From Octopus sinensis (lineage: Eukaryota), in NCBI RefSeq assembly GCF_006345805.1, contig NC_043007.1:7130001-7194000 (forward strand): DNA of 64,000 nt. Reading direction: 5' to 3'. The notes beneath the pieces were generated by a model, which did no database searches, was not told the origin of the DNA, and was given only the letters and a program-made list of their open reading frames with translations. The position numbers were made by a program, and so were the translations under genes. Shown in pieces: positions 5,811 to 59,512 of the stretch. How positions within the stretch are numbered: the first letter of the stretch is position 1; each line of letters begins with the position of its first letter.

Positions 5811-6023
5811 TAGGAGGGACTTTTAAAGTCAAAACTACCATAATAAACACATTTTGTACCAAACGCGAGGGAATGCAACTCTCGAAGCAAGCCTTTTAAG
5901 AAGATATTCTGTTAAAAACTGAATCTGTTTTTGAAAGGCTCGCTTCGAGAATTGCATAACCTCTCGTTCGGTAAACAAAAAATGGGTTTATTATGGTAGT
6001 TTTGACTTTAAGAGTCCCTCCTA
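5811..6023. mobile_element. Fold-back MITE with long TIRs and apparent TA target duplication
   Basis: Outer 38 bp pair at 37/38 (5811-5848 vs 5986-6023); pairing continues inward (TGCAA.TCTCGAAGC.AGCCTT); ends TA|GGAGGGAC...GTCCCTCC|TA. Confidence 0.8.
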
Positions 6024-7012
6024 GCATGATAAATATATTTAAAGGGAATAATTAATAATTTTTTTCCAATTAGCGATGAAATGACAAGCATTTATTTACA
6101 TAAATATCCATTTAGGAAACTTATGCACAACAGTTAGTTGCATAAATCCTTTTCAATAAGGGGTGAGAGTTCAAATTCCATGCGTGCTCACTCTTTTGTT
6201 TCCATCGAGGGCTTATATACCCCGATACTTATCCTTGCTTCTCCGACATTTCTTTACCATTTTGAGAGTAGCCAGGTAGATACAAGTCAATTCTCGAAGT
6301 GCTACTCTAGCGCATCGTAGCCAAAAAGCTAGTCTTTCTCTCTTATTTGTTTTTATTATCTAAAATCACAGGATCCGCTAAATACGAGCAACGATGTGCC
6401 CGGAATATATCTAACCAGCGTCACGGTTCTTGACCTACAATCCATATTCCCGTTTCATACTTCGTGTCTAATTGAGAAACTACCTTCAATTAATTAGATA
6501 CATGGTAGTAAATGAAAGAAAAACACTTTCCTTGCAATTTCATAACAATATTTCTGTGAGCCACAAATATAATCCCAGTTCTGTGTTTCATATAAACAAG
6601 CACGAACTTACAACATTGACAAATACTTATAGTTTAGAAAGAGTTTCAAACTTTTGCCATATTAACACAATGCACTTCGTAGAAGAGAATGGTTTGTTTT
6701 TTATTTTCACTTGAAAGTGTTTATAATAATCACTGTAACTTATCAACGCCTATGAATCGACTTGATCATTAAAATGTTAAACATACAAATTGCAATGAAG
6801 AGATACACAATAGACAGACTTCTGGGAACGATTAAGAATTAGTATTTTAACGGGCATTTCTAGAAATGTGTGTGCTTGTATTATAATGTTTTGTTTCTTT
6901 TCTGATCCCAAAATATATCTCTGCTTTTAGCATTCCTTAGATTCATATATATACATACACATAGAGACACACACATACACACACACAACACACACACACA
7001 CACATACACACA

Positions 7013-7045
<33 letters not shown>

Positions 7046-7186
7046 TTCATTAACGCCCAATACGGAACAGCTTTATAAGCAAGAGCTAGTTGTGTTTTTC
7101 AGCCATGAAAGGCAGTGAGCAGAATTGATACGATTTACATGTCCATAAAATGTTCATTAACTTCTTACACGTATACACACGCTCCC

Positions 7187-7239
<53 letters not shown>

Positions 7240-7445
7240 TATATAAAATTATTACATTATATAAAAGGGCTTAGTCAAATAAATTACTTTGCCACATACT
7301 GAACTCATTAGAAATAGTAGCTAAAAAAACTTTTTTAAAACTATTTCTAATACTTAAAGAAAATCTCTCTCATATAGTGTTTGCTCAATTCAACTCACGA
7401 AAGTATGGGGGTAAAGACATTAAAAAATCAAATGCAAAGGTTATT

Positions 7446-7497
7446 TGAGAACGTACGTTTCTAGATTAGTCAACTCGACATTTCTTTCGTCAGCTCA
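7446..7497 (-). ncRNA. Mirror copy of the same hammerhead motif (left arm)
   Basis: Exact reverse complement of 7783-7834. Confidence 0.75.
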
Positions 7498-7782
7498 GAA
7501 CTCCTTGGTTTGGATTTGAAAACACTGAAATTGGGAGCATACCCTTTCGGCTTCTTATCGCTTCTGAAGATCTGCTCGAACTATCAGTGCCAGCAAACTC
7601 AAAATATGCAAGCGAAGAATTTCTGCTCTCCCCTTTCCACCAGCGTGGGGAGAGCAGAAATTCTTCGCTTGCATATTTTGAGTTTGCTGGCACTGATAGT
7701 TCGAGCAGATCTTCAGAAGCGATAAGAAGCCGAAAGGGTATGCTCCCAATTTCAGTGTTTTCAAATCCAAACCAAGGAGTTC

Positions 7783-7834
7783 TGAGCTGACGAAAGAAAT
7801 GTCGAGTTGACTAATCTAGAAACGTACGTTCTCA
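7783..7834 (+). ncRNA. Type I hammerhead ribozyme motif (right palindrome arm)
   Basis: Stem I TGAG/CTCA, core CTGACGA, stem II AGA..GTC-GAGTT-GAC..TCT, GAAAC, palindromic stem III AACGTACGTT, GUU triplet (cut predicted after 7830). Confidence 0.75.
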
Positions 7835-8116
7835 AATAACCTTTGCATTTGATTTTTTAATGTCTTTACCCCCATACTTTCGTGAGTTGAATTGAGCAAA
7901 CACTATATGAGAGAGATTTTCTTTAAGTATTAGAAATAGTTTTAAAAAAGTTTTTTTAGCTACTATTTCTAATGAGTTCAGTATGTGGCAAAGTAATTTA
8001 TTTGACTAAGCCCTTTTATATAATGTAATAATTTGAATTCGCCTTAAATGGTCCTTTGCATACTGAATACTTGGTGAAATTGATTAATAATTAATTAATT
8101 TTACCCTCAATTGTTG

Positions 8117-8199
<83 letters not shown>

Positions 8200-8219
8200 C
8201 CTCCCATATACATACATAT

Positions 8220-9041
8220 ATAGTGTACGAAGGGGAAATAGTCGCCAGTTTACATTTTTAATTTCGTGCATCCGCATTGGTTTTGATTTTGTCGACTGCA
8301 CAGTATAGTGGGGTGAGAAAGACACCACCATGGTGCAATTCTCTGTGCCAGAAATTTGGAAACTACATTCTGTACTGCATGGCATTTGCAGCGGAAGCTC
8401 AAATACGAACATTTCAGAATGTTTAGGAGTCAGTCTAAGCACAGTGTAAACTGAGGACATGTACCAAGAGTAATAAAAACCAAACATCCAGCCAACATTA
8501 TGGTATTTGGAGTGATCGCTAGTGATGGCGACGTTATGCCTCCATTCATCTTCCAATTCGGCCTCGAACTCAACACGGAGACCTCCATCAAGAGCATGAA
8601 GGAGGTAGTGCTGCCCTGGGTCAAGAGGTGGCTGATGGAAGACTATGTCTGGACTCTGTACCATGCCACACGAGCAAGAGAATTCACTCATGTCTGTCAG
8701 ACAATTTCTGTGACCACAGTGCCCCTAACATCTGGCCACCTAACTCCTCAGGCTGCAACGCCCTTGATTATTATGTGTGGGGTGCAGTTGAGCGCGAGAC
8801 CAAAGATGAGCTAGAGGCAAGGATTATGGTAGCATTCCCCAACTTAAACAAGGAGACCGTCCAGAAGATTTGCAGGAGATTCCCAAGTCGTTTGGAGACC
8901 GTGGTTGATGTCAATCGCGAGTTTATTGAATAAATTTACTCATTAGTATTTCAAGATATTTTTATGTAGTTAAAAACGAGTTGTCAGTGTTATTTTCATT
9001 TTTGCGTAATTTAGACGACAATATATTCACCGCACCCTTTA
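8220..9041 (+). mobile_element. Internally deleted maT/DD37D-like mariner-family DNA transposon
   Basis: TKHPANIMVFGVIASDGDVMPPFIF, DSVPCHTS, IWPPNSSGCNALDYYVWGAVERET, CRRFPSRLETVV..NREFIE*; degenerate TIR pair ending CGCACCCTT|TA. Confidence 0.85.
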
Positions 9042-9737
9042 TATTTGATGAGAAGCTTGTACTATCTACTTTCACTTAGATGGGTTTGAACTGGCAAGGG
9101 GCGAGTTATTCTGACTCTATACGCACGATGATATGATGCAAGCTAAACATATCCGCTGGTTGAAGCGAAGAGGCCGCGAAAAATAAATCGTTAGTCTAAT
9201 ATACGACCGATATATTTAGCCCGGCCTTTCTCTTTGTGTCATAGCTACAGATACATTAAGATTTGGAAGAAAATGAAATCATTTCATTTTTATTTAAGTT
9301 ATTTATTCTTAATTTTTGATAGAAATTTACCCGTCTCTAAGGCGACATCACGGATCTCTTTACGCTTTGTATGTAATTAATTATAAAGTCAAAACACTAA
9401 ACAAGCTATGGAGATTGTGTTACATAAGCCTCTTAGAATTGATCAAAGGATGCAATTGTTTGTGAAGAGTAAATCTAGCCTTGAGCTTTCTGCCGCATAC
9501 AATGCAGAGGTCTATGTTTATCTAACTAATTGCTTGTCTACTCGCGAATTTTTTCTCAACACGAAAAGCTTCAGCTCCAACTAAACGAAGCTACGCTGGG
9601 CTTCCATACAATTACAGCCTTAACGACAAAAGAAATCTCTATGAAAAGGAAATGCGATCGAGTCTTCATTGAATTACAGTAATAAATATTATTTACAGAT
9701 GTGGAATTGATAAATATGAAATATATATATATATATA

Positions 9738-9875
9738 GCTTTTATCCTTTCCTCGCTTCAGTCATTGGACTGCGGCCATGCTTGAGCACCGCCTTGAATG
9801 TCTCAGTCGAACAAATCGGTCCTTGTACTTCAATTCTTAAAACCTCTTACTTATTATATCTGTTTCTTTTGTTCG
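9738..9875 (-). mobile_element. SINE family 1, 3' fragment
   Basis: CAGTCATTGGACTGCGGCCATGCTTGAGCACCGCC tail motif. Confidence 0.75.
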
Positions 9876-9944
9876 AATGGTATCTCAGACCAAAACAACC
9901 CAATCCATGCTGTTAACCCGCGCGAAAAGTGTATACAAATACAA

Positions 9945-10196
9945 AGACTGGCTTAGATGTTAGGGTGTCAGCATCATGATTGTAAGACTGTGGTTTCGAT
10001 TCCTGGACCGGGCGAGGCGTTGTGTTTTCAAGCAAAACACTTCATTTGACGTTGCTCCAGTCCACTCAGCTGAGAAAAAATGAGTAACGCTGCGATGGAC
10101 TGGCGTCCCGTCAAGCTAGGGAACACATACGCCATAGAAACGGGGAAACCGAGCCCGTGAGCCTGGCTAGGCTTTAAAGGGACGCATTTTTTTTTA
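9945..10196 (+). mobile_element. tRNA-derived SINE with Meta/V-domain-like core
   Basis: GGTTTCGATTCC B-box-like head, GCTCCAGTCCACTCAGCTG and CTGCGATGGACTGGCGTCCCGTC core words, T-rich end. Confidence 0.65.
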
Positions 10197-10199
10197 GAT

Positions 10200-10362
10200 A
10201 TACGACGGGTTTTATTATTTTTGTGTTTTTTTTTTCTTTTTCTCTCCACCAAATCCACTCACTCGAGTAGAAGACACTTGTGCAAGACGCCACCTGATGG
10301 AAGAGAACGCAATACCATGTGATTGAGAAGCAAAGTATTTACCACACGGCTACGCCTGCGCC
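10200..10362 (-). mobile_element. Decayed SINE family 1 head
   Basis: CCAAATCCACTCAC, GTAGAAGACACTTG, TTACCACACGGCTACGCCTGCGCC. Confidence 0.65.
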
Positions 10363-10817
10363 GATGTAGTTTGCTGATACTTAAATTACAATCTTATTGT
10401 GATATAAGGAAAAAAAGACGATTATTATTCTGAGATTCTTTATGGAAATAGTTCAGGATTTACTCGTCAAATCTTGCTTACATCTGACGAGGCAACTTTT
10501 CCAAAGACTTTCTCGAATATAAACCTAGAAAAACATTAGTAATGCTTAACACTTTACAATCTTGCAAGGAAATGGAAACATTCCTTTGACAGCTATAGAA
10601 GCCATCTACCAAAGCAGCGGTTCCCGTCTCTAAATATTATTGGGTGAAATATGTAAAAGTTCACTTACTACTCTCAATTTCTTTTCGAACATATGATGAT
10701 GGTCTGGCTGTCTGTCTATCTATCAATCTATCTTATCTATCGCTTTCTTTCTCTCTCCCTCTCTCTCCTTTTCCCCTCTCACCCTCGCTCTTTCGCTTTC
10801 CCTGTCTCTCTCTCTCT

Positions 10818-10869
<52 letters not shown>

Positions 10870-10956
10870 ATATATATAATATAATGAAATTATTGTATAC
10901 AGTGCTCAGGTGCACCACATATATATGTATATGTGAGTGTGTGTGTGTATAATATC

Positions 10957-11019
<63 letters not shown>

Positions 11020-11396
11020 ATATCATATGTGTGATAGTTTCGAGAAATATTAGCAGATTGCAGCAATATCAAGCAGGTTGAGTGGGTGGTGGGAGAAGAG
11101 GACAGATACATGGTCGATCAACTAGAGAAGGAAATGGGATGAGAAGCAGTTTTCTATTTTGAAATCTCATGAGGCAAGTGCCTTCTTGAACAGGCACCTA
11201 TTTAGTAGGGGGCTTCATTAAACATACTCCCACACAAAACTATACACAAAGCACAAAGGCAAACATGCACGAATACACGGATATATATATATATATATAT
11301 TTAAATTTTGCATATGTGTGTATGTCTTTGTGCGTGGGCGTGTGTGTATGAATGTGCGTCCATATATGTTTAATATGTTTATATATATGCACCTAC

Positions 11397-11427
<31 letters not shown>

Positions 11428-11430
11428 ACA

Positions 11431-11843
11431 CTTACTCTACACTCTCTCTTGTTTCAGTCATTTGACTGTGGCCATGCTTGAGCACCGTCTTTAGTCGAGG
11501 AAATCGACCCCAGGACTTATTCTTTGTAAGCCTAGTACATATTCTATCGGTCTCTTTCGCCGAACTGCTAAGTTACGGGGACATAAACACACCAGCATCG
11601 GTTGTCAAGCAATGTTGTGGGGGGATAAACACAGACATACAAATATACACACACACATACATATATACATACATATATACGACGGGCTTCTTTCAGTTTC
11701 CGTCTATCAATTCCACACATAAGGCTTTGGTCGGCCCTAGGCTATAGTAGAAGACACTTGCCCAAAGTTCCACGCGGTGGGACTGAACCCGGAACCATGT
11801 GGTTTATAAGCAAGCTACTTACCACACAGCTATACCTACGCCT
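11431..11843 (-). mobile_element. SINE family 1, full length
   Basis: Colinear with 2062-2486 and 21528-21944. Confidence 0.9.
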
Positions 11844-13635
11844 ATATTTATACATATGCATGTAATGTATATACGGGTATTTGTATTTATGTTTGTTTAT
11901 TTGTTTATACGTATACTAATGTGTTGTATATACTTATATATGTGTCTTTATCTACCCAAGTAGTGTCCTTCTTTGTTTATGTTTGTGGTTGTGTGTACAC
12001 CCACTGCCACATCACATATCAACAAGGACATCTGAGCACACCCTGCCTTTCCCTGCAACTGAACAAGTGGAAAACATGCCTAGAAGCATTAATTGCTCGG
12101 AATGCGTGTGAAGTTGCATAAACAACTTCGAGTATGATGTTGCATGTATATCAAGGACTGTGTCCGGCCATACATTGATAAATGTCAACAAAAGAGGTTT
12201 CAAAGTATTTTGGAAGTTAAATTATTAAATTCCATTAGAACAATGTTGAACTATATCTTCTCACAGCTTTCAGCTGTAAGAACTCTGGAAATGTCACTGA
12301 TCCAATTTGAGAGTGACATAGTAGGAAGACGAATAGACAACAACAAAACGAAGAAAAAAATAGGCCAGCTAAAAATAAAATATAATCATATAAAATGCAA
12401 AGTGAATACTTTTTATAGCTCATTTTTTGCTCAATTTGTGTAGTGAATAGAAACCGTTTATGAAGAGTCACATGAAAGATTTCGAAACCCAGCATCACGT
12501 AAATAATGTTGTTTTTTTAAAAAACTTTTTTCTCTCCAACTGAAGCATTCATTCATTTCCTTCTTCCTTCTTTGTAATGTTTTGCGTTGAAATATGTGCA
12601 TCTAACATTTGCGCTTTTATATACACATGTGTGTGTATGTGTGTTAGTGTGTATACGTACACGTTTGTAAACATATGCATATGTTTAACTGTGTACATGT
12701 GTGCGAGTTGGTGTATGTCTGTGATAGTGTGTACTTATTAGTATTGAACACATTTTCTACAGCTAACTAATTCCTTCCCTTTATATGTCTCTCTCTGTTT
12801 CTTTCTATCTCTCTCTCTCTCTCCTCTCTCTCTCTTTCTGTCTGTCTCTCTGTCTCTCAAGCTCTATCCCCTTCTCTATCTCTACTCTCCTTCACTATCT
12901 CTGCACACAGATACACACAAACACACACATCCAGACACAAACACAAACACACACACACACAAACATAATAATTAGTTCTTTATATCAATGTACATGTTAT
13001 GCATTCGAAAATAAGTATTCTTAGCTCTGCATTTCATATGTATTTAAGAATATATGTATTTACACACACACACACTTACATATATATATATATGGATGTA
13101 TATGTTACATATATATATGTGTGTGTGTGCGTATGCACTCACATACAAACACTCCCATGGATAAGTGCGTACACATGCTTATATGTTCGAGAACACCTAC
13201 CAACTGTAATGAATAGATACAACCACATACCCACTCACACACACGTAACCACCCAGTTGATATTGTCTAAATTCCTATGAAAGGGCCTTGTTTCTGTGTG
13301 TTGCAGTTTGGATCCTTATCTAAAGCAGTGTAATTTGAAACATTAACCAGATTTCACATAGAAATACGAATATATGAATACATGTAGAAGGATGAGTGTT
13401 TCTTTTTCATCACACAGCTTCCACCTCATATAATTCAGTCCTCTGTCTTCTATGAACCTTCATTCTGTTCAAGTTTTTCAGTGTTTTATTGTCTTAGAAT
13501 CCTGCTAGCTTCTATTTTCAAATTACACCGACACTTTAATTCATGTGTGCGTGTCTTTGCGCGTGTGTGTGGTGTGTGTGCGTGTGTATCTTCGTGGATA
13601 TGTGTGTATATGTGTGTATTTTGTGTCTGTATATA

Positions 13636-25281: not shown

Positions 25282-25560
25282 TATAATCAAAATAAGCAAC
25301 AAGTATATCCAAGGTAGAGTAGTACAATTGTTTCATGCTACTTCATTTTATTAAGCACTGTAAGTACTTATTAAATACTGTAAGTACACTGTTTAATAAA
25401 ATGAAGTAGCATGAAATGATTGTACTACTCTACCTTGGATATACTTGTTGCTTATTTTGATTATAATCACCCCATTTGATTTATATGGATAGTACCATAC
25501 CAAATTCTGGTGCCTTTCACTTAAGTACCATATTCATCTGAATCTAAATTTTGCTGAACT
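25282..25560. mobile_element. Asymmetric fold-back cassette in (TA)n (arms ~25282-25356 and 25391-25465; long arm to 25560)
   Basis: Arms ~75 bp with few differences; spacer carries ACTGTAAGTAC twice; homologous to 42270-42447. Confidence 0.8.
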
Positions 25561-26431: not shown

Positions 26432-26501
26432 TTAAAGTATATTACTCTGGTATTTGAGTACTATTTTTCCACCTTGTTTCACATTTATGTGCCTACTCTG
26501 G

Positions 26502-26536
<35 letters not shown>

Positions 26537-26560
26537 TATATATATATTATATATATATAT

Positions 26561-27402
26561 ATTTAATCTTTTACACATTTCAGCCGGAAGCTGAAGCCAT
26601 ACTGGTGCACCGCCTATACACCATCCAGTATAGCTTCTGGTGAAGTAGCAAATGGATGTTGCCGCTCGTTTTTGTGCCTCCTCCCGTGATGTAGGTTCAT
26701 CTGGTACTGCAGATAAAAAATTGTCTAGACGTTTTTGGAAGACTTTCATGTCCACACCTTTCAGATCCTTGATGTTCTGTGGTAGGGCATTAAAATTTGT
26801 AGTCACTTGAATCCCAAGCTGTTGCAATATTGGGTATGCATCCACGATGCAGATGGAACAATATGTATGGGAGTGCATATCTCTAGCGACTCCTCTCCAA
26901 GGAGTAGAGTCCCAGTTCCTTTAACCTCTTCCAATAGCCGATGGGTTTTACTGAGTCTATCTTCTTGGTGTACAAGCGCGAGATCGACTCTAATTCTGCA
27001 CTTAGTTTTACGTTCTGCGGTGACCACAGCTTGCACTATCAGTCTAGACGACTGAGGACAAATGTTCTCTACAGCTGTAGCTTTGTGTCTCTGTTCTTGG
27101 TCCTGAAGGATCTCAGGATCCAACCTGCCTCCCTTCTGCATAGTGTTACCATCTGAGCAATTTGCACATGGAAAGTTGCATCGTTGCCCATGTGAATTCC
27201 TAGGTGGCACACCGACTCTAAATCTGGTATTACATTGCCCGCTGCTCCCGTGTATTTCAGTTGTAGTTTGTTTGTGGGCTGATAGTAGAGTGCTTGAAAT
27301 TTTGCGGCATTGACCAGCATATTATTCTCATCTGCCCATTTTATATTGCGTTCATGTCATTCTGAAATATTAGGATGTCAGTAGGATCCTTCACAGCCTG
27401 CG
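26561..27402 (-). mobile_element. 5'-truncated CR1-group LINE 3' fragment
   Basis: WADENNMLVNAAKFQAL, V.HLGIHM.NDATF, AGWILRSFRT, LSRLD..KLWSP, RLKELGLYSLERSR, FNALPQNIKDL..VFQKRLDNFLSAVPDEP. Confidence 0.88.
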
Positions 27403-27432
27403 ATATATATACACATATACATACATATATAT

Positions 27433-27655
<223 letters not shown>

Positions 27656-28064
27656 AGATAAAGTAACAGCATGAGAGAGAGACAGAGACAGAGGGAGAGA
27701 TATATAACGATTTGCGCTTTTCCAGGTTTCCGTTGGAACCATATATCAACTTTTTTAATAACTTCCTTTCAACTTCTGTTCTGTTTTATTAGACCGTTGC
27801 TGGGCGAAATGGTGAAAAGCTATTCCGTCCGGAGGCCTAAAATGTCTTTCCACCAGAATATTGTTATTCCTATATACACTAAAGTGTGTAAAAAATGAGA
27901 AACATTCATATCTGATATATCTATATTGAATATTCTTTTTCTGGAATATGTTATATTTCGTTACTTTTTACGAACACCAAAGGACAAATGCATAAATCTT
28001 TCAAATATATGAAATATTTTGTCGAAAATATCCGTATGTATATGTGTGTGAGTGTGTGTGTATT

Positions 28065-28212: not shown

Positions 28213-28483
28213 GAGAGGATGCTGCAACAACTATATTGCTTTAAGTGTCAAATATATTTGGAATTTATTCCTGAAGACATCATGTAGAAAACGGTCCATA
28301 ATACATGATTGTTCCACTTGGGGCCTCAGGGCAGATTATATTGAGCTATAAAATACGAAAGTTTCATTCTTGTAGACAGGCCTGTATATATATATATATA
28401 TACATAAAAATATGTTTAATTTTTCTTATTCTTATTCACTTTCCACTGTTATATGTACGTGGGTGTGTGGTTGTGTATGTATG

Positions 28484-28535
<52 letters not shown>

Positions 28536-28630
28536 TACATACATATGTATTTATAGATATTTATATTTATACATATATGTACATAAACATATACATGCAT
28601 ATATATTCATATATATGCTCATATAGTTAT

Positions 28631-29380: not shown

Positions 29381-29400
29381 TATATAGATACATACATAGA

Positions 29401-29511
<111 letters not shown>

Positions 29512-40059: not shown

Positions 40060-40121
<62 letters not shown>

Positions 40122-40573
40122 TTGTTGAAATGGAAAGATGAATTTTCTTGTTACAGATTATTCAAAAGTTTAACCGATACCTGGGTAGCAAAAATCACAG
40201 CAGAAAAAAACACGGTTGGAGATAAGACCATTTGGTGTTGCAACCGTGCGTTGGTGCGGATAATTGAAGTTTAATATAATTAGTGAATGGAAGAAATGGA
40301 GTTGAACGAAGATTGTACTGAATTCCTTTAATTACATTCTACATATGTTTAACCATGGGCTCTTAAGGAGTGTCCTCGTTCGAATTGCTTTGCTGCGCCT
40401 GTTTTGTTTTGTTCTGTCAACGTAATTCCTGCTTTTTCCTGAACAGAAAGCTGCAATATGGTATCCTTATTTAATCAGAATTTGGAAAATTGTGGCCTTT
40501 GAAACATGTGTAGAATGTAATAAAAGGAATTCTGTACAATCTTCGTTCAACTCCATTTCTTCCATTCACTAAT

Positions 40574-40580
<7 letters not shown>
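40122..40580. mobile_element. Third asymmetric fold-back cassette in (TA)n (arms ~40272-40352 and 40499-40580)
   Basis: ~80-bp inverted arms with a few mismatches, ~146-bp spacer, left arm extends ~150 bp to the TA tract; decayed hammerhead at 40335-40372. Confidence 0.8.
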
Positions 40581-40623
<43 letters not shown>

Positions 40624-40679
40624 CTAATGTAGGATAAAATCTTTTTCGGGAAAATATATATATATATTTATATATATAT

Positions 40680-42110
40680 AAGGATGAAAAGGAACACACG
40701 GGTTAACATATATGAAAAAGCAAGTCAAGATAGAAAATGCTAAAATAATTTTATAAAGAACATTTCAGTACCGGTTTCAGTCATTGAGACTTTTTCAACT
40801 GTAACAATTAAACAATTAAATTTAGAAAAATTAAAAGAAAAGTTTTTTTTTAAATAGTTGTAGAGTGTTCAAATATAAGTGGCATTTTCCTTGTTTCTGC
40901 CTGTCTCTGTCTCTCTTGTTTACTCTTGTGTGTTCGAAGTCGTTGTGAATTCTTGGTAGGGAAGAAGAAGGAGGCGGAGGAGGATGAGGAGGGGGGAGGA
41001 AGAAGACGAAGAATTTGGGAGTGCCATGATTGTAGTGTTTTGAATGGTCAGTGGAGGCTAGCAGTTGCTGTTCAATTCATGAAAGTATTTCTATTGAATA
41101 TTTTGTTTATAGAATTTGCGTAGGTGTTATACTAAAAAGCATTAGTGATAAAGTTAGGAAGGAGAAGGGAGGAGAGGGGGGAGAAGAAGAAGAAGAAGAA
41201 GAAGAAGAAGAAGAAGAAGAAGAAGAAGAAGAAGAAGAAGAAGAAGAAGAAGGAGATGATGAAGGAGAAGGGAGAATATGAATGAGTGAAAATAGTGAGG
41301 TGTTGAATGATTATAGCTGTGATTGGGGCTGATTTTTAATGGATTCTTAGGAATGTAATATTTGCGTGTATATGTGTGTTATTCAAGGCCGCGGTAGACG
41401 CGTTCAGAAGGGGCCTGTATTTTGTAATAAAGATAGTTTCTTTACTAATTCGTTGGCTCCAGGTTGTATCGTCCCTGAATTGGTAGAGGGGAAAAATCCT
41501 GAAGCTTGGAGTTTTGTTGTTGGCGCAAATATCTATGTGTTGGCTGAATGCTATTTTTCTGTGCAGGGCCATTCTTTTACGTATACTATTTTTTGTTTGG
41601 CCTATGTATTGATCTTGACACCCAGAGCAGGTTAGTGTGTATATCAGGTTCTCCGAAGCACATGTGAAGTTGCTTTTCACTGTGAAACGTTGTCTCTGTT
41701 TGAAGGAGAACTCTGATCCCTCAATTAGATAATCGCATATCCCACAATTGGGTCTTACACTTTTTTTTACTGTCGGCTTCTGTGTTGTTGAGCGTATTCG
41801 GGCTTGTGTTAGGATACTTTTCATAGATTTGGGCTGTCTCTTGCTTTTTATGATCGTGTGTGTTTGGAGGATTAAGTTCATTATGTGGTCCTTTTTTAGC
41901 AAGGGTATGTTTTGGAGGATGGTGTCGAAGGCTTCATTGTTGAGAGGGTTGTGTTTGGAGATGTATGGTAAGGCTTTTGGTTGTAATTTTTTCTTTAATT
42001 TGGGATGTCTGAGTTCCTGGATGTTGCGTTGAAGGGCATGTTGAATTCATATGTCAATTAGTGAAGGTGGGTAGTTCCTGGTGATGAGTGTATCTTTTAG
42101 TTTATGTATT
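40680..42110 (-). mobile_element. 5'-truncated Penelope-like retroelement with GIY-YIG endonuclease and (TTC)n-containing 3' region
   Basis: Open frame ~42045-41336: ALPYISKHNP, RPNCGIC, FTCASENLIYTLTCSGCQDQYIGQTKNSIRKRMALH, KETIFITKYRPLLN. Confidence 0.9.
40763..40804 (-). ncRNA. Decayed hammerhead motif downstream of the Penelope ORF, same strand
   Basis: TTACAG TTGAAAA AGTC-TCAAT-GACT GAAAC CG GT A CTGAAA; two core changes relative to CTGAAGA. Confidence 0.5.
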
Positions 42111-42177
42111 CAATATATATATCTACGCACATGCAAAATTTTTATATACTATCTGAATTTTATGCATATATATATAG

Positions 42178-42258: not shown

Positions 42259-42269
42259 TTATATATATA

Positions 42270-42481
42270 ACTTCAGCAAAATTTAGATTTAGATGAATGT
42301 GGTGCTTAAGTTAAAGGCACCAAAATGTTGTATGGTATTATCCATATAAATCAAATGGGGTGATTATAATCAAAATAAGTATATCCAACAAGTAGTGTAG
42401 TACAATTGTTTCATGCTACTTCATTTTATTAAACACTGTAAGTATTACATCAGTTTTAAAATGTCGAGCAATCTTCAGCCA

Positions 42482-42485
<4 letters not shown>
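42270..42485. mobile_element. Sibling of the 25.3-kb cassette, with a decayed hammerhead at 42439-42485 (minus)
   Basis: Reverse complement of 25390-25560; minus strand TAAGTGG CTGAAGA ... AAAAC TGAT GT A ATACTTA. Confidence 0.65.
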
Positions 42486-47469: not shown

Positions 47470-47730
47470 TAATTGGTGAAGGAAAAGGAAATGGATTTGG
47501 TACGAGTCTTCATTCAACGCGACGATCACGGCGACACATCCTGCAGCTGTGCCATCTTACTGGTAGCATATTGTGCATCTAGTTGTGTTGCATCAACCAG
47601 TACAGTTTGTGACTCGTCGGGTGTTTGGTATAAAAGATATTTTACGACATATACTGATTGTACAATTGTCCTTGTGAATTCACTTAGAAGCTACCAAAAA
47701 TTATACCAACGCGCACACAGAAAAACCGGG
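47470..47730 (+). mobile_element. Ancient CR1/L2-like RT relic
   Basis: AAATGGATTTGGTA..A.TCTT.ATTCAACGC.ACGATCA shared with 48770-48870 (minus); TSCSCAILLVAY resembles RSC.TQLL. Confidence 0.4.
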
Positions 47731-48399: not shown

Positions 48400-48870
48400 T
48401 ACAAATATCTGTGTCTATCTGAGCGTGTCCGCCGAACCAGCCCTTAATGCGTCGGCCCAGTCATCTGCAACCGACCGTAGAATGTTCCACGCAGTGGGGA
48501 GCCTGATACCACTTGTCTACGAACATCTTGGTTGTTTATAGCTACGTTAAATGACTGTCCCTTGTCTATATATGTGTTCATGTCAACAAACGTATACCCA
48601 TCCCTCTTCCTTTCAAGTCCTATCATTTGAAAGGTTTTACTTTCTATCCTTTATTATTTTAATTTATGTTATATGTTGCCAGACCTATCTAGTAATTCTA
48701 GTAACCCTAAAATTATTCTACTCTCAGTCAGTGTGGCGTGACACAGACTGCATTAATTGCAGCAACCCAACATCCTGCCCTTAAGGGACAGCTGCAGGAT
48801 GGGTTGAAATGATCGTTGCGTTGAATAAAGATTTCTACCAAATCCATTTTCCGTTGCCTTCATCAACTAC
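48400..48870 (-). mobile_element. Ancient CR1/L2-like RT relic
   Basis: NGFGRNLYST..FQPIL..KGQDV, then GQSFNVAINNQ..RQVVSGSPLRG (R.Q.V.IN...V.SGVPQG-like), then an FADD-like remnant. Confidence 0.5.
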
Positions 48871-50269: not shown

Positions 50270-50329
<60 letters not shown>

Positions 50330-51212
50330 GCAGACAGACAGATCTGAAGCCCTTTCACTCTATCTCGTTTCCCTTGTAGTCTGGATTGATATCAATTTTC
50401 CACCATTTCCACGGCGGGAAGCAACAATTAGGAACTGACAGATATGAGAAACAAGTCTAATTGCTTCTTAAAAAGCCAAAAAATGTGTCTAGATGTGCAT
50501 TTCATGCAGAGAAAAGACATAATCATTTTTCCTCTTGACAAACTTCCTTTCTGTCAGTAACAACAAGATTTCTCTTCTCCACAAGAAACATTATGCATAC
50601 ACTTAAACATTGTCACATACAAACAGACATACTCTACAACACACACACATATGCGAGCACTCATTCGATGATATTAGTTATTATAAAACTAGCGAATAGT
50701 GAATACCGGCATTAAATAGAACTTACGATTGTAAGGTCAGGAGCAGCTCAATCACCCTTTCCTGAATTCTGAACAAAATTTACGTGACAAATTCTGTTCT
50801 ATAAAATATAAATTCCATGTTTCTAATCCAGAAGCAAGTATTCTCCAGCAGTTTTTTTTTATAACTATTTCTTTCGACTGCAACAAACCAACATCTTAGG
50901 GAATTCGTTATCCATTACTTAAATCATCTTTTATACATCTTGGCAATTTATTTTATGGCTTTTGCATCAATATTTGAGAAGCTTGAACATCAATATCTAA
51001 TTAGTCTAGAAATGTCATAGTATCGTATAATCAGTAGGGCTTCGAATATAACGAAATGTGTTAATTATTAGCCACCGCATGTCTTATAGAATTGTGTTAG
51101 TCTTGCTGACTCTATACGCTGCTCGGTGTTTGATATAAGGTGTTCTACTTGGAAACGTTTACATTCGGTTTAAAATAAAAATCCCCAAGTATTTTCTATT
51201 TATTTGTTTACG

Positions 51213-58483: not shown

Positions 58484-58561
<78 letters not shown>

Positions 58562-58564
58562 CAA

Positions 58565-59330
58565 GTAATGTTCATAGCCAGTTCAACATGGCTGTTCCGT
58601 TCGAACGGAGTGTATTGGGATTTTTTAACTTCAAGAGGACATCTCCTCAACTGGTTAACGATGCGCAGCTACATCCAATATATTGTGAACAGGAGAACTA
58701 ACCCCTACCACCTTTTGGCAACGGGATCAGCATACCAGTCTGGTTTTGGTTACTTTTGCCTCCCTTCAGTACTGGACTCCTCATCTGCTAAAGATGGTAA
58801 TAGCCCGCCTCTGCTCGCAATATATATAAATTCAAGCGGCTCACAGTCGCTGATTTTGTAACAAACTAAAAAGCTAATTCTAAAATCTCTCTAAGAAATG
58901 ATTGCAGTAGTTGTACTTGCAGGTAATGCGCATGGCCACTTCAACATTGCTATTCCGTTCGAGCGGAATTTACTACGAATTTTAACCCCAAATGGACATC
59001 TCCTCAAGCTGGTTCATTCTGCTCGAACTGAACAGCCGTATTGAAGTGGCTACAAACATTACTTGCTCGTACAACTACTGCAACCATCTCTCAGAGAGAT
59101 TCTAGAACTAGCTTTTTAGCTCGTTGTAAAGTCAGCGACTGTGTGCCGCTTGAATTTATATATATTCCGAACAGATGCGAGCTACTGTCATCTCTAGCAG
59201 ACGAGGTGTCCAGTACTGCAGAGAAGCAGAAATAGCCCGAAACCAGATTGATGTTCTAGCTCCGTCGCTAGAACGTGGTAGGAGTTCGACGAACCGGTGT
59301 CCTATTCAGGAGAGAATGTTTTGATCGCAG
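58565..59330 (+). repeat. Unclassified element with diverged direct repeats (58565 and 58923) and hairpins
   Basis: GTAATG..CAT.GCCA.TTCAACAT.GCT.TTCCGTTCGA.CGGA...GGACATCTCCTCAA.CTGGTT occurs twice, 358 bp apart. Confidence 0.6.
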
Positions 59331-59395
59331 TCAATTATACACCATAGGAACCTTATCAGTCGTAAAGCTTATGACAGACTTAAGTCAATGCAGAT

Positions 59396-59414
59396 GGATA
59401 GAGAGATAGATAGT

Positions 59415-59512
<98 letters not shown>
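59396..59512. repeat. (GATA)n microsatellite
   Basis: Direct reading. Confidence 0.95.

What the first reader, a model, noticed from the sequence alone, without database searches (positions are those of the whole stretch)
7246..8034. Perfect 789-bp palindrome (388-bp arms, zero mismatches, 13-nt loop)
Every block of the two arms pairs exactly, in a window where most repeats are heavily decayed. This implies a very recent fold-back event or ongoing arm-to-arm conversion. Such a structure could extrude a cruciform, and transcription from either side gives a 388-bp perfect dsRNA, relevant if the host is an A-to-I-editing-rich coleoid (inference). A read fold-back artefact is possible. Against that, the right arm continues 86 bp to a (TA)n boundary and two older cassettes here share the layout.
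Basis: partly seen in the sequence, partly recalled or inferred. Interest (0 to 1): 0.8.

Follow-up and report, generated by a model that had tools for sequence, protein, structure and literature searches.

The report
Young head-to-head retroelement palindrome in (TA)n
A flawless 789-base DNA palindrome sits inside a TA-repeat of what looks like a cephalopod genome; it is most likely a very recent back-to-back insertion of a short retrotransposon fragment (Penelope-like style), a known kind of event, but that origin is inferred by analogy and needs read-level and whole-genome checks.

Summary
Arms 7246-7633 and 7647-8034 are 388 nt and 100% complementary, with a 13-nt loop. (TA)n abuts the left arm. 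The right arm runs on 86 nt to a second (TA)n.

The same anatomy, (TA)n | inverted copy | spacer | direct copy | extension | (TA)n, recurs three more times in the window in decayed form (C2, C3, C4).

C2 is demonstrably part of a dispersed repeat. A second, non-palindromic, longer copy lies at 42268-42484, with the same 3' end and also inside (TA)n.

A 5'-truncated Penelope-like element (PLE) lies in (TA)n in the window. Its nearest named relative, in Argonauta hians, is a head-to-head inverted pair in (TA)n with a one-sided tail.

Published work describes exactly this for PLEs: (TA)n targeting, inverted 5'-truncated copies, self-priming palindromes and tails.

Best reading (about 0.5): a retroelement fragment less than about 1 My old, inserted into (TA)n as a self-primed or double-primed hairpin.

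Not shown: that C1 itself is multicopy or PLE-related. I found no homology, no coding signal, no hammerhead, and no access to the source genome.

Rivals:
- snap-back at a replication fork stalled at (TA)n
- assembly artefact, disfavoured by the asymmetric outer ends

dsRNA, editing or cruciform roles are untested. Ordinary-to-moderate interest.

The parts
7190..7245 (.). Left (TA)n tract, inferred to be the upstream half of the target microsatellite. It abuts the left arm directly.
   Evidence: TRF; sequence. Only 0.65% of window positions lie within 3 nt of a (TA)>=6 tract edge.
7246..7633 (-). Left arm: inverted copy of the unit, exact reverse complement of 7647-8034. It lacks the last 86 nt of the unit.
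   Evidence: 388/388 complementary.
7634..7646 (.). 13-nt loop TTTCCACCAGCGT, the turn of the hairpin, flanked by CTCTCCCC / GGGGAGAG.
7647..8034 (+). Right arm: direct copy of the unit. Sense orientation is inferred by analogy with C2.
8035..8120 (+). One-sided 86-nt extension: the 3' end of the unit, present only on the right. It ends ...CAATTGTTGAAATT next to (TA)n, and 9 of the last 11 nt match the C2-family 3' end TTGCTGAAsTT.
   Evidence: the pattern was derived from these same sites, so the match is only suggestive.
8121..8199 (.). Right (TA)n tract, inferred to be the downstream half of the target microsatellite.
   Evidence: TRF.
7929..7973 (+). Small internal stem-loop with a 12-bp stem inside the unit, mirrored at 7307-7351. 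Possible structured 3' region of the element RNA (speculative).
   Evidence: dG -10.2 kcal/mol, z -2.2.
25282..25560 (+). Comparator C2: an older cassette of the same layout (arms 25282-25367/25380-25465, extension about 95 nt, (TA)n on both sides).
42268..42484 (-). Second, non-palindromic copy of the C2 unit. It is 87% identical, has the same 3' end, extends further 5' than the C2 hairpin turn, and lies between (TA)n tracts. This shows that the C2 unit is a dispersed, 5'-truncatable repeat.
40123..40580 (-). Comparator C3: (TA)n | arm' 40502-40580 | 151-nt spacer | arm 40272-40350 | 149-nt extension | (TA)n.
58561..59390 (.). Comparator C4: an old complex. (TA)n is followed by a partial direct copy (58562-58656 = 58920-59014, 79%) and then inverted arms 58748-58969/59016-59237 (82%).
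40623..42112 (-). 5'-truncated Penelope-like element (GIY-YIG endonuclease with a CxxC linker, ORF 41336-41902), bounded by (TA)n. It shows that (TA)n-inserting PLEs live in this genome.

Best explanation
The 875-bp block 7246-8120 is one insertion into a (TA)n microsatellite. It was made from a single short piece of retroelement (loop + right arm + extension, about 487 nt, the 3' end of a 5'-truncated or non-autonomous element).

Proposed steps, all inferred except the anatomy:
1. An element-encoded endonuclease nicked the AT-rich target.
2. Reverse transcription started at the element's 3' end (...TTGTTGAAATT) and ran about 487 nt.
3. Either the nascent cDNA folded back on itself at the loop and copied 388 nt of its own sequence (self-priming), or a second cDNA primed from the other DNA strand, starting 86 nt inside the RNA, ran to the same 5' end.
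4. The free end was joined to the other side of the (TA)n.

Both arms therefore come from one template at one moment, which explains the zero mismatches. This is the head-to-head, one-sided-tail architecture described for Penelope-like elements, so a PLE-type enzyme is the most likely agent. A microsatellite-targeting LINE is possible instead.

The event is very young. Using an octopus substitution-rate calibration, the upper bound is roughly 1 My. The block probably has no function, but it is a potential fragile site or dsRNA source.
For: (1) The anatomy is exact and one-sided.

(2) In an unbiased scan for short-loop hairpins, only two non-simple hits exist in 64 kb, C1 and C2. Both start within 3 nt of a (TA)n edge. 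The chance is about (2 x 0.0065)^2, or about 2e-4. Both then reach a second (TA)n after 86-95 nt, which has P of about 0.1 each. C3 and C4 repeat the theme.

(3) C2's arm plus extension is a dispersed repeat. A second copy at 42268-42484 is 87% identical, has the same 3' end next to (TA)n, is not palindromic, and extends further 5'. The C2 palindrome turns exactly at a natural quasi-hairpin of that family, as expected for self-priming.

(4) A 5'-truncated PLE bounded by (TA)n is in the window.

(5) Its Argonauta hians relative (L001) has the layout (TA)n | 36-nt tail + inverted copy 6091-8296 | 2154 nt | direct copy 10451-12601 | (TA)n. The arms are 96.7% identical overall, and the inner 576 nt are 100% identical.

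(6) Literature:
- PLEs show (TA)n insertion bias, an adjacent inverted 5'-truncated copy and a one-sided tail (PMC8557442).
- Inverted junction palindromes are interpreted as self-priming, head-to-head (PMC3846280).
- A PLE protein nicks and extends both strands at AT-rich DNA and initiates internally on the RNA (PMC11167929).
- PLEs and many SINE families have been recently active in Octopus vulgaris (PMC13282606).

(7) C4 has a partial-tandem-plus-inverted arrangement typical of PLE pseudo-LTRs.
Against: C1 itself is not shown to be a repeat. There is no second copy in the window (blastn word 7, E<0.05). There are no exact matches in the metagenome, prokaryote-genome or viral collections. 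A six-frame protein search found nothing, but these negatives are weak because the source genome is barely represented: even the neighbouring Tc1-like remnant has no hit above about 51% identity over most of its length, with 65-67% only over 30% of it.

C1 shows no significant similarity to the window PLE 3' UTR, the Argonauta PLE 3' end, or C2, C3 and C4 (Smith-Waterman z <= 2.1). It has no coding signal and no hammerhead ribozyme.

The 86-nt extension is longer than the 30-40-nt PLE tail. In the Argonauta PLE the asymmetry lies in the centre, not at the outer end. The 3'-end motif shared by C1 and C2 is only 9 of 11 nt and was noticed post hoc.
Confidence: 0.5

Rival explanations
1. Replication-based snap-back of resident sequence. 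A fork copying a native inter-(TA)n interval (loop + arm + extension) stalled at the hairpin-prone (TA)n. The nascent strand folded back, copied 388 nt of itself, then re-annealed to the (TA)n. This made an inverted duplication with no transposon involved, or long after a transposon had inserted.
For: It reproduces the same geometry, including the arm that abuts (TA)n. The four cassettes are unrelated in sequence, as expected of a sequence-independent process. C1 has no detectable repeat or coding identity. Fold-back and template-switch mechanisms, and the fragility of AT-rich and palindromic repeats, are established (papers listed).
Against: It does not predict the second (TA)n 86-149 nt beyond the direct arm in all three cases (joint P about 1e-3; this is a post hoc estimate). 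C2 consists of a retroposon copy oriented with its 3' end at the far (TA)n. C4's tandem-plus-inverted form and the Argonauta PLE pair point to element-driven events. From my own recollection, reported short-range template switches are mostly far shorter than 388 nt.
Confidence: 0.2
2. Assembly or polishing artefact: a chimeric fold-back long read, or arms homogenised by polishing.
For: Perfect identity is what an artefact would give. Fold-back artefacts exist on ONT and PacBio platforms (PMC12870357). PLE-type inverted structures are known to trouble assemblies (PMC8557442). (TA)n tracts are easy places to mis-join.
Against: A fold-back read retraces its path, so it would put the inverted 86-nt extension and then the inverted right flank to the left of the arm. 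Instead the left arm stops at 388 nt and joins (TA)n and an unrelated flank. The same layout occurs in three mutated, hence real, cassettes. Reads were not available, so this rests on geometry only.
Confidence: 0.1
3. An old palindrome kept perfect by ongoing arm-to-arm gene conversion.
For: From my own knowledge, closely spaced inverted repeats can convert each other, as in sex-chromosome palindromes. Zero mismatches would fit.
Against: Cassettes of the same class in the same window have diverged by 4%, 7% and about 20%, so conversion is not keeping such arms identical. The flanking (TA)n tracts are long and fairly pure.
Confidence: 0.05
4. A fold-back or MITE-type DNA transposon whose arms are its terminal inverted repeats, or a dedicated hairpin-RNA gene.
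For: The whole element is an inverted repeat. TA is the Tc1/mariner target. A Tc1-like remnant lies 300 bp away. Generic miRNA-precursor models score on the hairpin (MIR5649, 76.5 bits).
Against: There is no target duplication at the palindrome borders (TA...GA). With the extension included there are no terminal inverted repeats. In C2 the extension belongs to the repeated unit, and the second copy has no inverted repeats and a variable 5' end, which is retroposon behaviour. The arm is unrelated to the Tc1-like remnant. All Rfam hits are below their gathering scores and simply reflect a perfect stem.
Confidence: 0.05

Closest known systems
Penelope-like element (PLE) insertions with an adjacent inverted 5'-truncated copy and one-sided 'tail' (Penelope/Poseidon, Neptune, Naiad)
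   Same: Insertion into AT-rich or (TA)n targets. Head-to-head inverted copies with a palindromic junction. One end longer than the other. 5' truncation. Near-identical arms when young. Seen here directly in the Argonauta PLE and described in PMC8557442, PMC3846280 and PMC11167929.
   Different: C1 carries no RT or GIY-YIG coding sequence, no pseudo-LTR tandem and no hammerhead, and has no detectable homology to a PLE. Its extension is 86 nt rather than 30-40 nt. Its two copies end within 13 nt of each other, giving a near-complete hairpin, whereas typical PLE pairs are asymmetric in the centre.
LINE-1 5' inversions by twin priming (Ostertag and Kazazian 2001; my own knowledge)
   Same: The second DNA strand primes internally on the same RNA and gives an inverted 5' segment joined to a direct 3' segment within a single insertion.
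   Different: Twin priming normally inverts a different part of the element, with only a small overlap or deletion at the junction. Here the two segments are the same 388 nt.
Fold-back inversions, short-range template-switch mutations, and self-primed palindromes at stalled forks or breaks
   Same: A nascent strand copies itself after a hairpin turn with a short spacer. There is an association with secondary-structure-prone AT repeats.
   Different: Those act on resident DNA and need no element 3' end. They do not predict (TA)n at both ends of the unit or a retroposon identity like that of C2.
AT-rich palindromic fragile sites (human PATRRs) and long perfect palindromes in model organisms
   Same: A several-hundred-bp, near-perfect, AT-rich palindrome with a minimal spacer, expected to extrude cruciforms and to be unstable (review PMC7999016, listed).
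   Different: No evidence of breakage or rearrangement here. The origin appears to be element-mediated.
Drosophila hpRNA loci and Foldback elements
   Same: A long inverted repeat that would give a long hairpin RNA if transcribed.
   Different: No evidence of transcription, conservation or small RNAs. No FB-type subrepeats.

Membership tests
Penelope-like retroelement insertion | Encodes, or is derived from an element encoding, a PLE reverse transcriptase plus GIY-YIG endonuclease | tested here: not met
   No Pfam hit in any of the six frames of arm + extension. A GIY-YIG PLE fragment exists elsewhere in the window (41336-41902), but it is unrelated in sequence. A 3'-UTR-only or non-autonomous copy would also fail this test.
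Penelope-like retroelement insertion | Insertion into AT-rich or (TA)n target DNA | tested here: met
   (TA)n on both sides: 7190-7245 and 8121-8199. The adjacency is non-random.
Penelope-like retroelement insertion | Adjacent inverted 5'-truncated copy (head-to-head) with a palindromic junction | tested here: met
   388-nt inverted copy with a 13-nt junction. The orientation as head-to-head is inferred from C2, where the extension is the 3' end of the family.
Penelope-like retroelement insertion | One-sided terminal extension ('tail', 30-40 bp) | tested here: inconclusive
   There is a one-sided extension, but it is 86 nt. The Argonauta PLE shows the canonical 36 nt.
Penelope-like retroelement insertion | Hammerhead ribozyme motif in the pseudo-LTR (canonical clades; absent in Naiads) | tested here: not met
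   No hammerhead at the gathering threshold or at E<=10.
Penelope-like retroelement insertion | Sequence homology to a recognised PLE, or to other genomic copies with a shared 3' end and variable 5' ends | tested here: not met
   Smith-Waterman against the window PLE 3' UTR and the Argonauta PLE 3' end gives z <= 2.1. There are no other copies in the window. The source genome could not be searched.
Non-LTR/PLE-type retroposon (generic) | Defined 3' end, variable 5' truncation, dispersed copies | not testable with these tools
   Met for the sister cassette C2. For C1 this needs the source genome.
MITE / Foldback DNA transposon | Terminal inverted repeats bounded by a target-site duplication; copies with constant ends | tested here: not met
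   Palindrome borders are TA...GA, so there is no duplication. With the extension included there are no terminal inverted repeats. The C2 family copy lacks inverted repeats.
miRNA / hpRNA gene | Match to a curated family at its gathering score, or conservation or expression | tested here: not met
   The best hit is MIR5649 at 76.5 bits against a gathering score of 100. It is symmetric on both strands, so it is a generic perfect stem. Expression is not testable.
Long-read fold-back assembly artefact | The inverted segment retraces the forward path, including everything distal to the arm | tested here: not met
   The left arm lacks the inverted 86-nt extension, and the left flank is unrelated to the right flank. 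Read support is not testable.

The most novel reading that the evidence does not exclude
(TA)n microsatellites in this (probably cephalopod) genome are sites of an ongoing, sequence-independent process that turns whatever lies next to them into long perfect palindromes. The process could be fork-stall snap-back, or an element enzyme acting in trans on arbitrary RNAs. It would continually seed the genome with perfect long hairpins that, when transcribed, are ready-made dsRNA substrates for ADAR editing or RNAi.
Probability: 0.12. Interest if true: 0.6.

Novelty: new member of a known kind. Interest (0 to 1): 0.3.

Why it matters
If the reading is right, this is a snapshot of a retroelement insertion caught before any decay. 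Both arms, the turn, the one-sided 3' extension and both target halves are intact. Such copies are the most informative natural substrates for working out how Penelope-type elements make their puzzling inverted structures, whether by self-priming or by priming from both strands. It would also indicate that the element family and its enzyme are active now in this genome.

Practically, it warns annotators that perfect palindromes next to (TA)n in cephalopod-like assemblies are likely element products, not necessarily assembly errors or hairpin-RNA genes. Perfect palindromes of this size are also candidate fragile sites and polymorphic markers.

Tried and rejected
1. Other copies of the arm in the window: none (blastn word 9 and word 7).
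2. Exact-word scans of public collections with three different 24-26-mers of arm or extension: none in the JGI metagenomes, GTDB genomes or IMG/VR.
3. Exact look-ups of the window ORFs 7510-7725 and 8107-8691 in the assembly index: not on record.
4. A search of 5.8 billion protein clusters with concatenated stop-free six-frame pieces of the arm: no hit. I judged this uninformative, because the adjacent Tc1-like remnant also finds nothing close.
5. Coding potential of the arm: none.
6. Rfam: only sub-threshold generic miRNA hairpin hits and no hammerhead; no tRNA.
7. By eye I saw resemblances between the C1 extension and the Argonauta PLE 3' end and tail (CCTCAATT..., TAATGGTCC...). A shuffle test rejected them (z = 2.1, 15 of 300 shuffles as good), so I make no homology claim.
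8. Pairwise tests among C1, C2, C3, C4 and the window PLE 3' UTR: nothing significant.
9. A link between the palindrome and the neighbouring Tc1-like element (long inverted terminal repeats): no similarity.
10. The two ENA contigs carrying the closest PLE endonuclease relatives are metagenome scaffolds and did not identify the host.

Full report
**1. Observation**

The window shows the palindrome exactly as described. Positions 7246-7633 and 7647-8034 are perfect reverse complements (388/388), separated by the 13-nt loop TTTCCACCAGCGT. Pairing ends at 7245/8035 (A versus G). As single-stranded DNA the block folds into one uninterrupted stem of -477.5 kcal/mol, against -73.7 +/- 5.3 for shuffles.

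The window is 34.8% G+C and crowded with microsatellites. There are 69 (TA)>=6 tracts covering 4.3% of it. There are no tRNAs and no Rfam families at gathering threshold. The ORFs are transposon debris. It is therefore eukaryotic, repeat-rich DNA.

**2. Anatomy and context**

- (TA)n 7190-7245 abuts the left arm.
- The right arm continues for 86 unique nt (8035-8120), ending ...CAATTGTTGAAATT, and then meets (TA)n 8121-8199.
- The block is thus (TA)n | inverted copy | 13 nt | direct copy | 86-nt extension | (TA)n.
- The arm has no coding signal in any frame.
- The only Rfam hits are generic miRNA-precursor models well below threshold, scoring equally on both strands. This simply reflects a perfect stem.
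- Immediately to the right (about 8330-8933, + strand) lies a frameshifted Tc1-like DDE_3 transposase remnant. It shares no sequence with the arm.

**3. The layout recurs**

A scan for hairpins with loops <=80 nt, excluding simple sequence, returns only two hits in 64 kb: this one (C1) and C2.

- C2 has arms 25282-25367/25380-25465 (86 nt, 93%). It begins at a (TA)n and runs on about 95 nt to another (TA)n.
- A wider search adds C3: (TA)n 40579-40622 | arm 40502-40580 | 151 nt | arm 40272-40350 (96%) | 149 nt | (TA)n 40064-40121.
- It also adds C4: (TA)n 58487-58560, then a partial direct copy (58562-58656 = 58920-59014, 79%), then inverted arms 58748-58969/59016-59237 (82%).

Only 0.65% of window positions lie within 3 nt of a (TA)n edge. 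A random position has about a 10% chance of meeting a (TA)n within 100 nt. The double association with (TA)n is therefore not chance, although the second figure is a post hoc estimate.

**4. C2 is a retroposon fragment**

The arm plus extension of C2 has a second copy at 42268-42484 on the minus strand (87% identity over 180 nt). That copy is not palindromic and lies between (TA)n tracts. It ends with the same 3' sequence (AAATTTTGCTGAAsTT followed by (TA)n) and extends about 50 nt further 5' than the point where C2 turns.

A defined 3' end, a variable 5' end, no terminal inverted repeats and a microsatellite target are the behaviour of a retroposon. The C2 turn coincides with a natural quasi-hairpin of the family (CATTTTAAAAC...GTTTAATAAAATG; dG -6.8, z -2.4). 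The reverse complement of the left arm matches the second copy better than the right arm does. This is what self-priming at a structured site would give. The last 11 nt of the C1 extension match the C2-family terminus at 9 positions. That is suggestive only, because the pattern was drawn from these sites.

**5. Penelope-like elements in this genome and a relative**

Window 42112-40623 (minus strand) is a 5'-truncated Penelope-like element (PLE). It has a CxxC linker and a GIY-YIG endonuclease (ORF 41336-41902) and is bounded by (TA)n.

Its best named relative is an Argonauta hians protein at 44% identity. This is weak support for a cephalopod-like host. The Argonauta locus (L001) is laid out as follows:

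- (TA)n 5991-6062
- a 36-nt one-sided tail
- an inverted copy 6091-8296
- 2154 nt of the longer copy, including RT-like ORFs
- a direct copy 10451-12601
- (TA)n 12591-12618

The arms are 96.7% identical overall, and their inner 576 nt are identical.

One scheme describes all of these cases: (TA)n | rc(E[q..z]) | E[p..q] | E[q..z] | E[z..end] | (TA)n. Only p, q and z differ between them.

**6. What is known**

- Craig et al. 2021 (PMC8557442) describe PLE insertions as highly 5'-truncated. They often have an inverted 5'-truncated copy adjacent, a 30-40-bp tail at one end, and a strong bias for (TA)n in Naiads and Neptune-type elements.
- Arkhipova et al. 2013 (PMC3846280) infer self-priming from the palindromes at head-to-head junctions.
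- Frangieh et al. 2024 (PMC11167929) show that a PLE protein nicks AT-rich DNA, extends both strands, and initiates reverse transcription internally. This explains the tail.
- In Octopus vulgaris, 31 PLE families and about 900 SINE families have recent insertions. Dong/R4 LINEs are also very active (PMC13282606). From my own knowledge these LINEs are microsatellite-targeting, so a LINE partner cannot be excluded.

**7. Most likely mechanism (inferred)**

A short element RNA was reverse-transcribed from a nick in (TA)n. After about 487 nt, one of two things happened. Either the cDNA folded back and copied 388 nt of itself, or a second cDNA primed from the opposite strand, starting 86 nt inside the RNA, ran to the same 5' end. 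The product was then sealed into the other half of the (TA)n.

Because two independent cDNAs ending within 13 nt of each other is unlikely unless both reach an RNA end, I favour self-priming for C1 and C2. Double-strand priming fits C3 and the Argonauta pair better.

Identity of the arms then measures age. The octopus calibration in PMC13282606 (Jukes-Cantor 0.09 at about 25 My) implies about 3.6e-9 substitutions per site per year. At that rate, zero differences in 388 paired sites give a 95% upper bound of about 1 My. By the same arithmetic C3 is about 5 My old, C2 about 10 My, and C4 tens of My. These figures are rough and assume an octopus-like rate. The decay of the older cassettes argues against arm-to-arm conversion as the reason for perfection.

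**8. What is not shown**

C1 has no second copy in the window and no match in any collection I could scan. Those collections hardly contain this genome. C1 has no significant similarity to either PLE or to the other cassettes. Resemblances I saw by eye failed a shuffle test. C1 has no hammerhead. Membership in the PLE family is therefore not established. The claim is that it works like a PLE-type head-to-head insertion.

**9. Rivals**

- *Snap-back at a fork stalled by (TA)n.* This would give the same geometry from resident DNA. It explains why the cassettes are unrelated, but not why a second (TA)n closes every unit, nor why C2 is a retroposon oriented with its 3' end at the far (TA)n.
- *Fold-back read artefact.* This would have carried the inverted 86-nt extension and the inverted right flank to the left of the arm, which is not the case. 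Only reads can settle it (PMC12870357). Polishing could also have erased a few real differences.
- *MITE/Foldback and hairpin-RNA-gene readings.* These fail their defining tests.

**10. Verdict**

The structure is real in the sequence and very young. It is most probably one more product of a known retroelement behaviour in a (TA)n-rich, probably cephalopod, genome. It is interesting as an undecayed example and as a possible fragile site or dsRNA source, but it is not a new kind of system. The functional suggestions (cruciform, dsRNA, editing, siRNA) remain untested.

Noticed in passing
window 8330-8933 (+): Frameshifted remnant of a Tc1-like transposase: HTH at 8330-8449 and the DDE_3 part at 8500-8933. 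Over most of its length the best database relatives are only 46-51% identical (a salmon-louse protein among the named hits at 42%, and metagenome contigs); two short matches reach 65-67% over 30% of the query.
   Followed up: partly
window 40623-42112 (-): 5'-truncated Penelope-like element with a CxxC linker and GIY-YIG endonuclease (ORF 41336-41902) and a (CTT)n run in its 3' UTR (about 41190-41255). It is bounded by (TA)n on both sides. The best named relative is from Argonauta hians (44% identity).
   Followed up: partly
window 42268-42484 (-) and 25282-25560 (+): Two copies of a short retroposon-like repeat with the 3' end AAATTTTGCTGAAsTT next to (TA)n. One is plain and one is in hairpin form. 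The hairpin turns at a natural quasi-hairpin of the family. The plain copy begins GTGGCTGAAGATT, which echoes its own 3' end GCTGAAGTT.
   Followed up: partly
window 40123-40580 and 58561-59390: Two further inverted-repeat cassettes abutting (TA)n. C3 has 79-nt arms at 96% with a 151-nt spacer. C4 has a partial tandem copy plus 222-nt arms at 82%. Neither has other copies in the window.
   Followed up: partly
L001 (Argonauta hians, GCA_054771915.1 BAAFZT010000013.1) 5991-12618: A Penelope-like element present as a head-to-head inverted pair inside (TA)n. The arms are 2.2 kb (96.7% identical, inner 576 nt identical). A 36-nt tail, CTTTATTTGCATAGTTCTCAACCTCAATTTTCAATA, is present at one end only.
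   Followed up: yes
window 5811-5848 / 5986-6023: 38-nt inverted repeat (TAGGAGGGACTT...) with a 137-nt spacer, not next to (TA)n. Possibly a small MITE.
   Followed up: no
window 28476-28585 / 29381-29490 and 47470-47553 / 48785-48869: Two wider-spaced inverted repeats: 110 nt at 81% with a 795-nt spacer, and 85 nt at 81% with a 1231-nt spacer. They could be terminal repeats of DNA transposons.
   Followed up: no
window 26432-27210 (-): Overlapping ORFs whose ends (…LDNFLSAVPDEP…) look to me like the C-terminus of a LINE ORF2. There was no Pfam hit.
   Followed up: no
window 59391-59512, 27405-27660, 50270-50343: (GATA)n arrays that cross-match each other at 89-96% identity.
   Followed up: no
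window 7045-7189: A 145-nt unique segment enclosed by (CA)n(TA)n 6949-7044 and (TA)n 7190-7245, just left of the palindrome. It could be another small insert within the same microsatellite.
   Followed up: no
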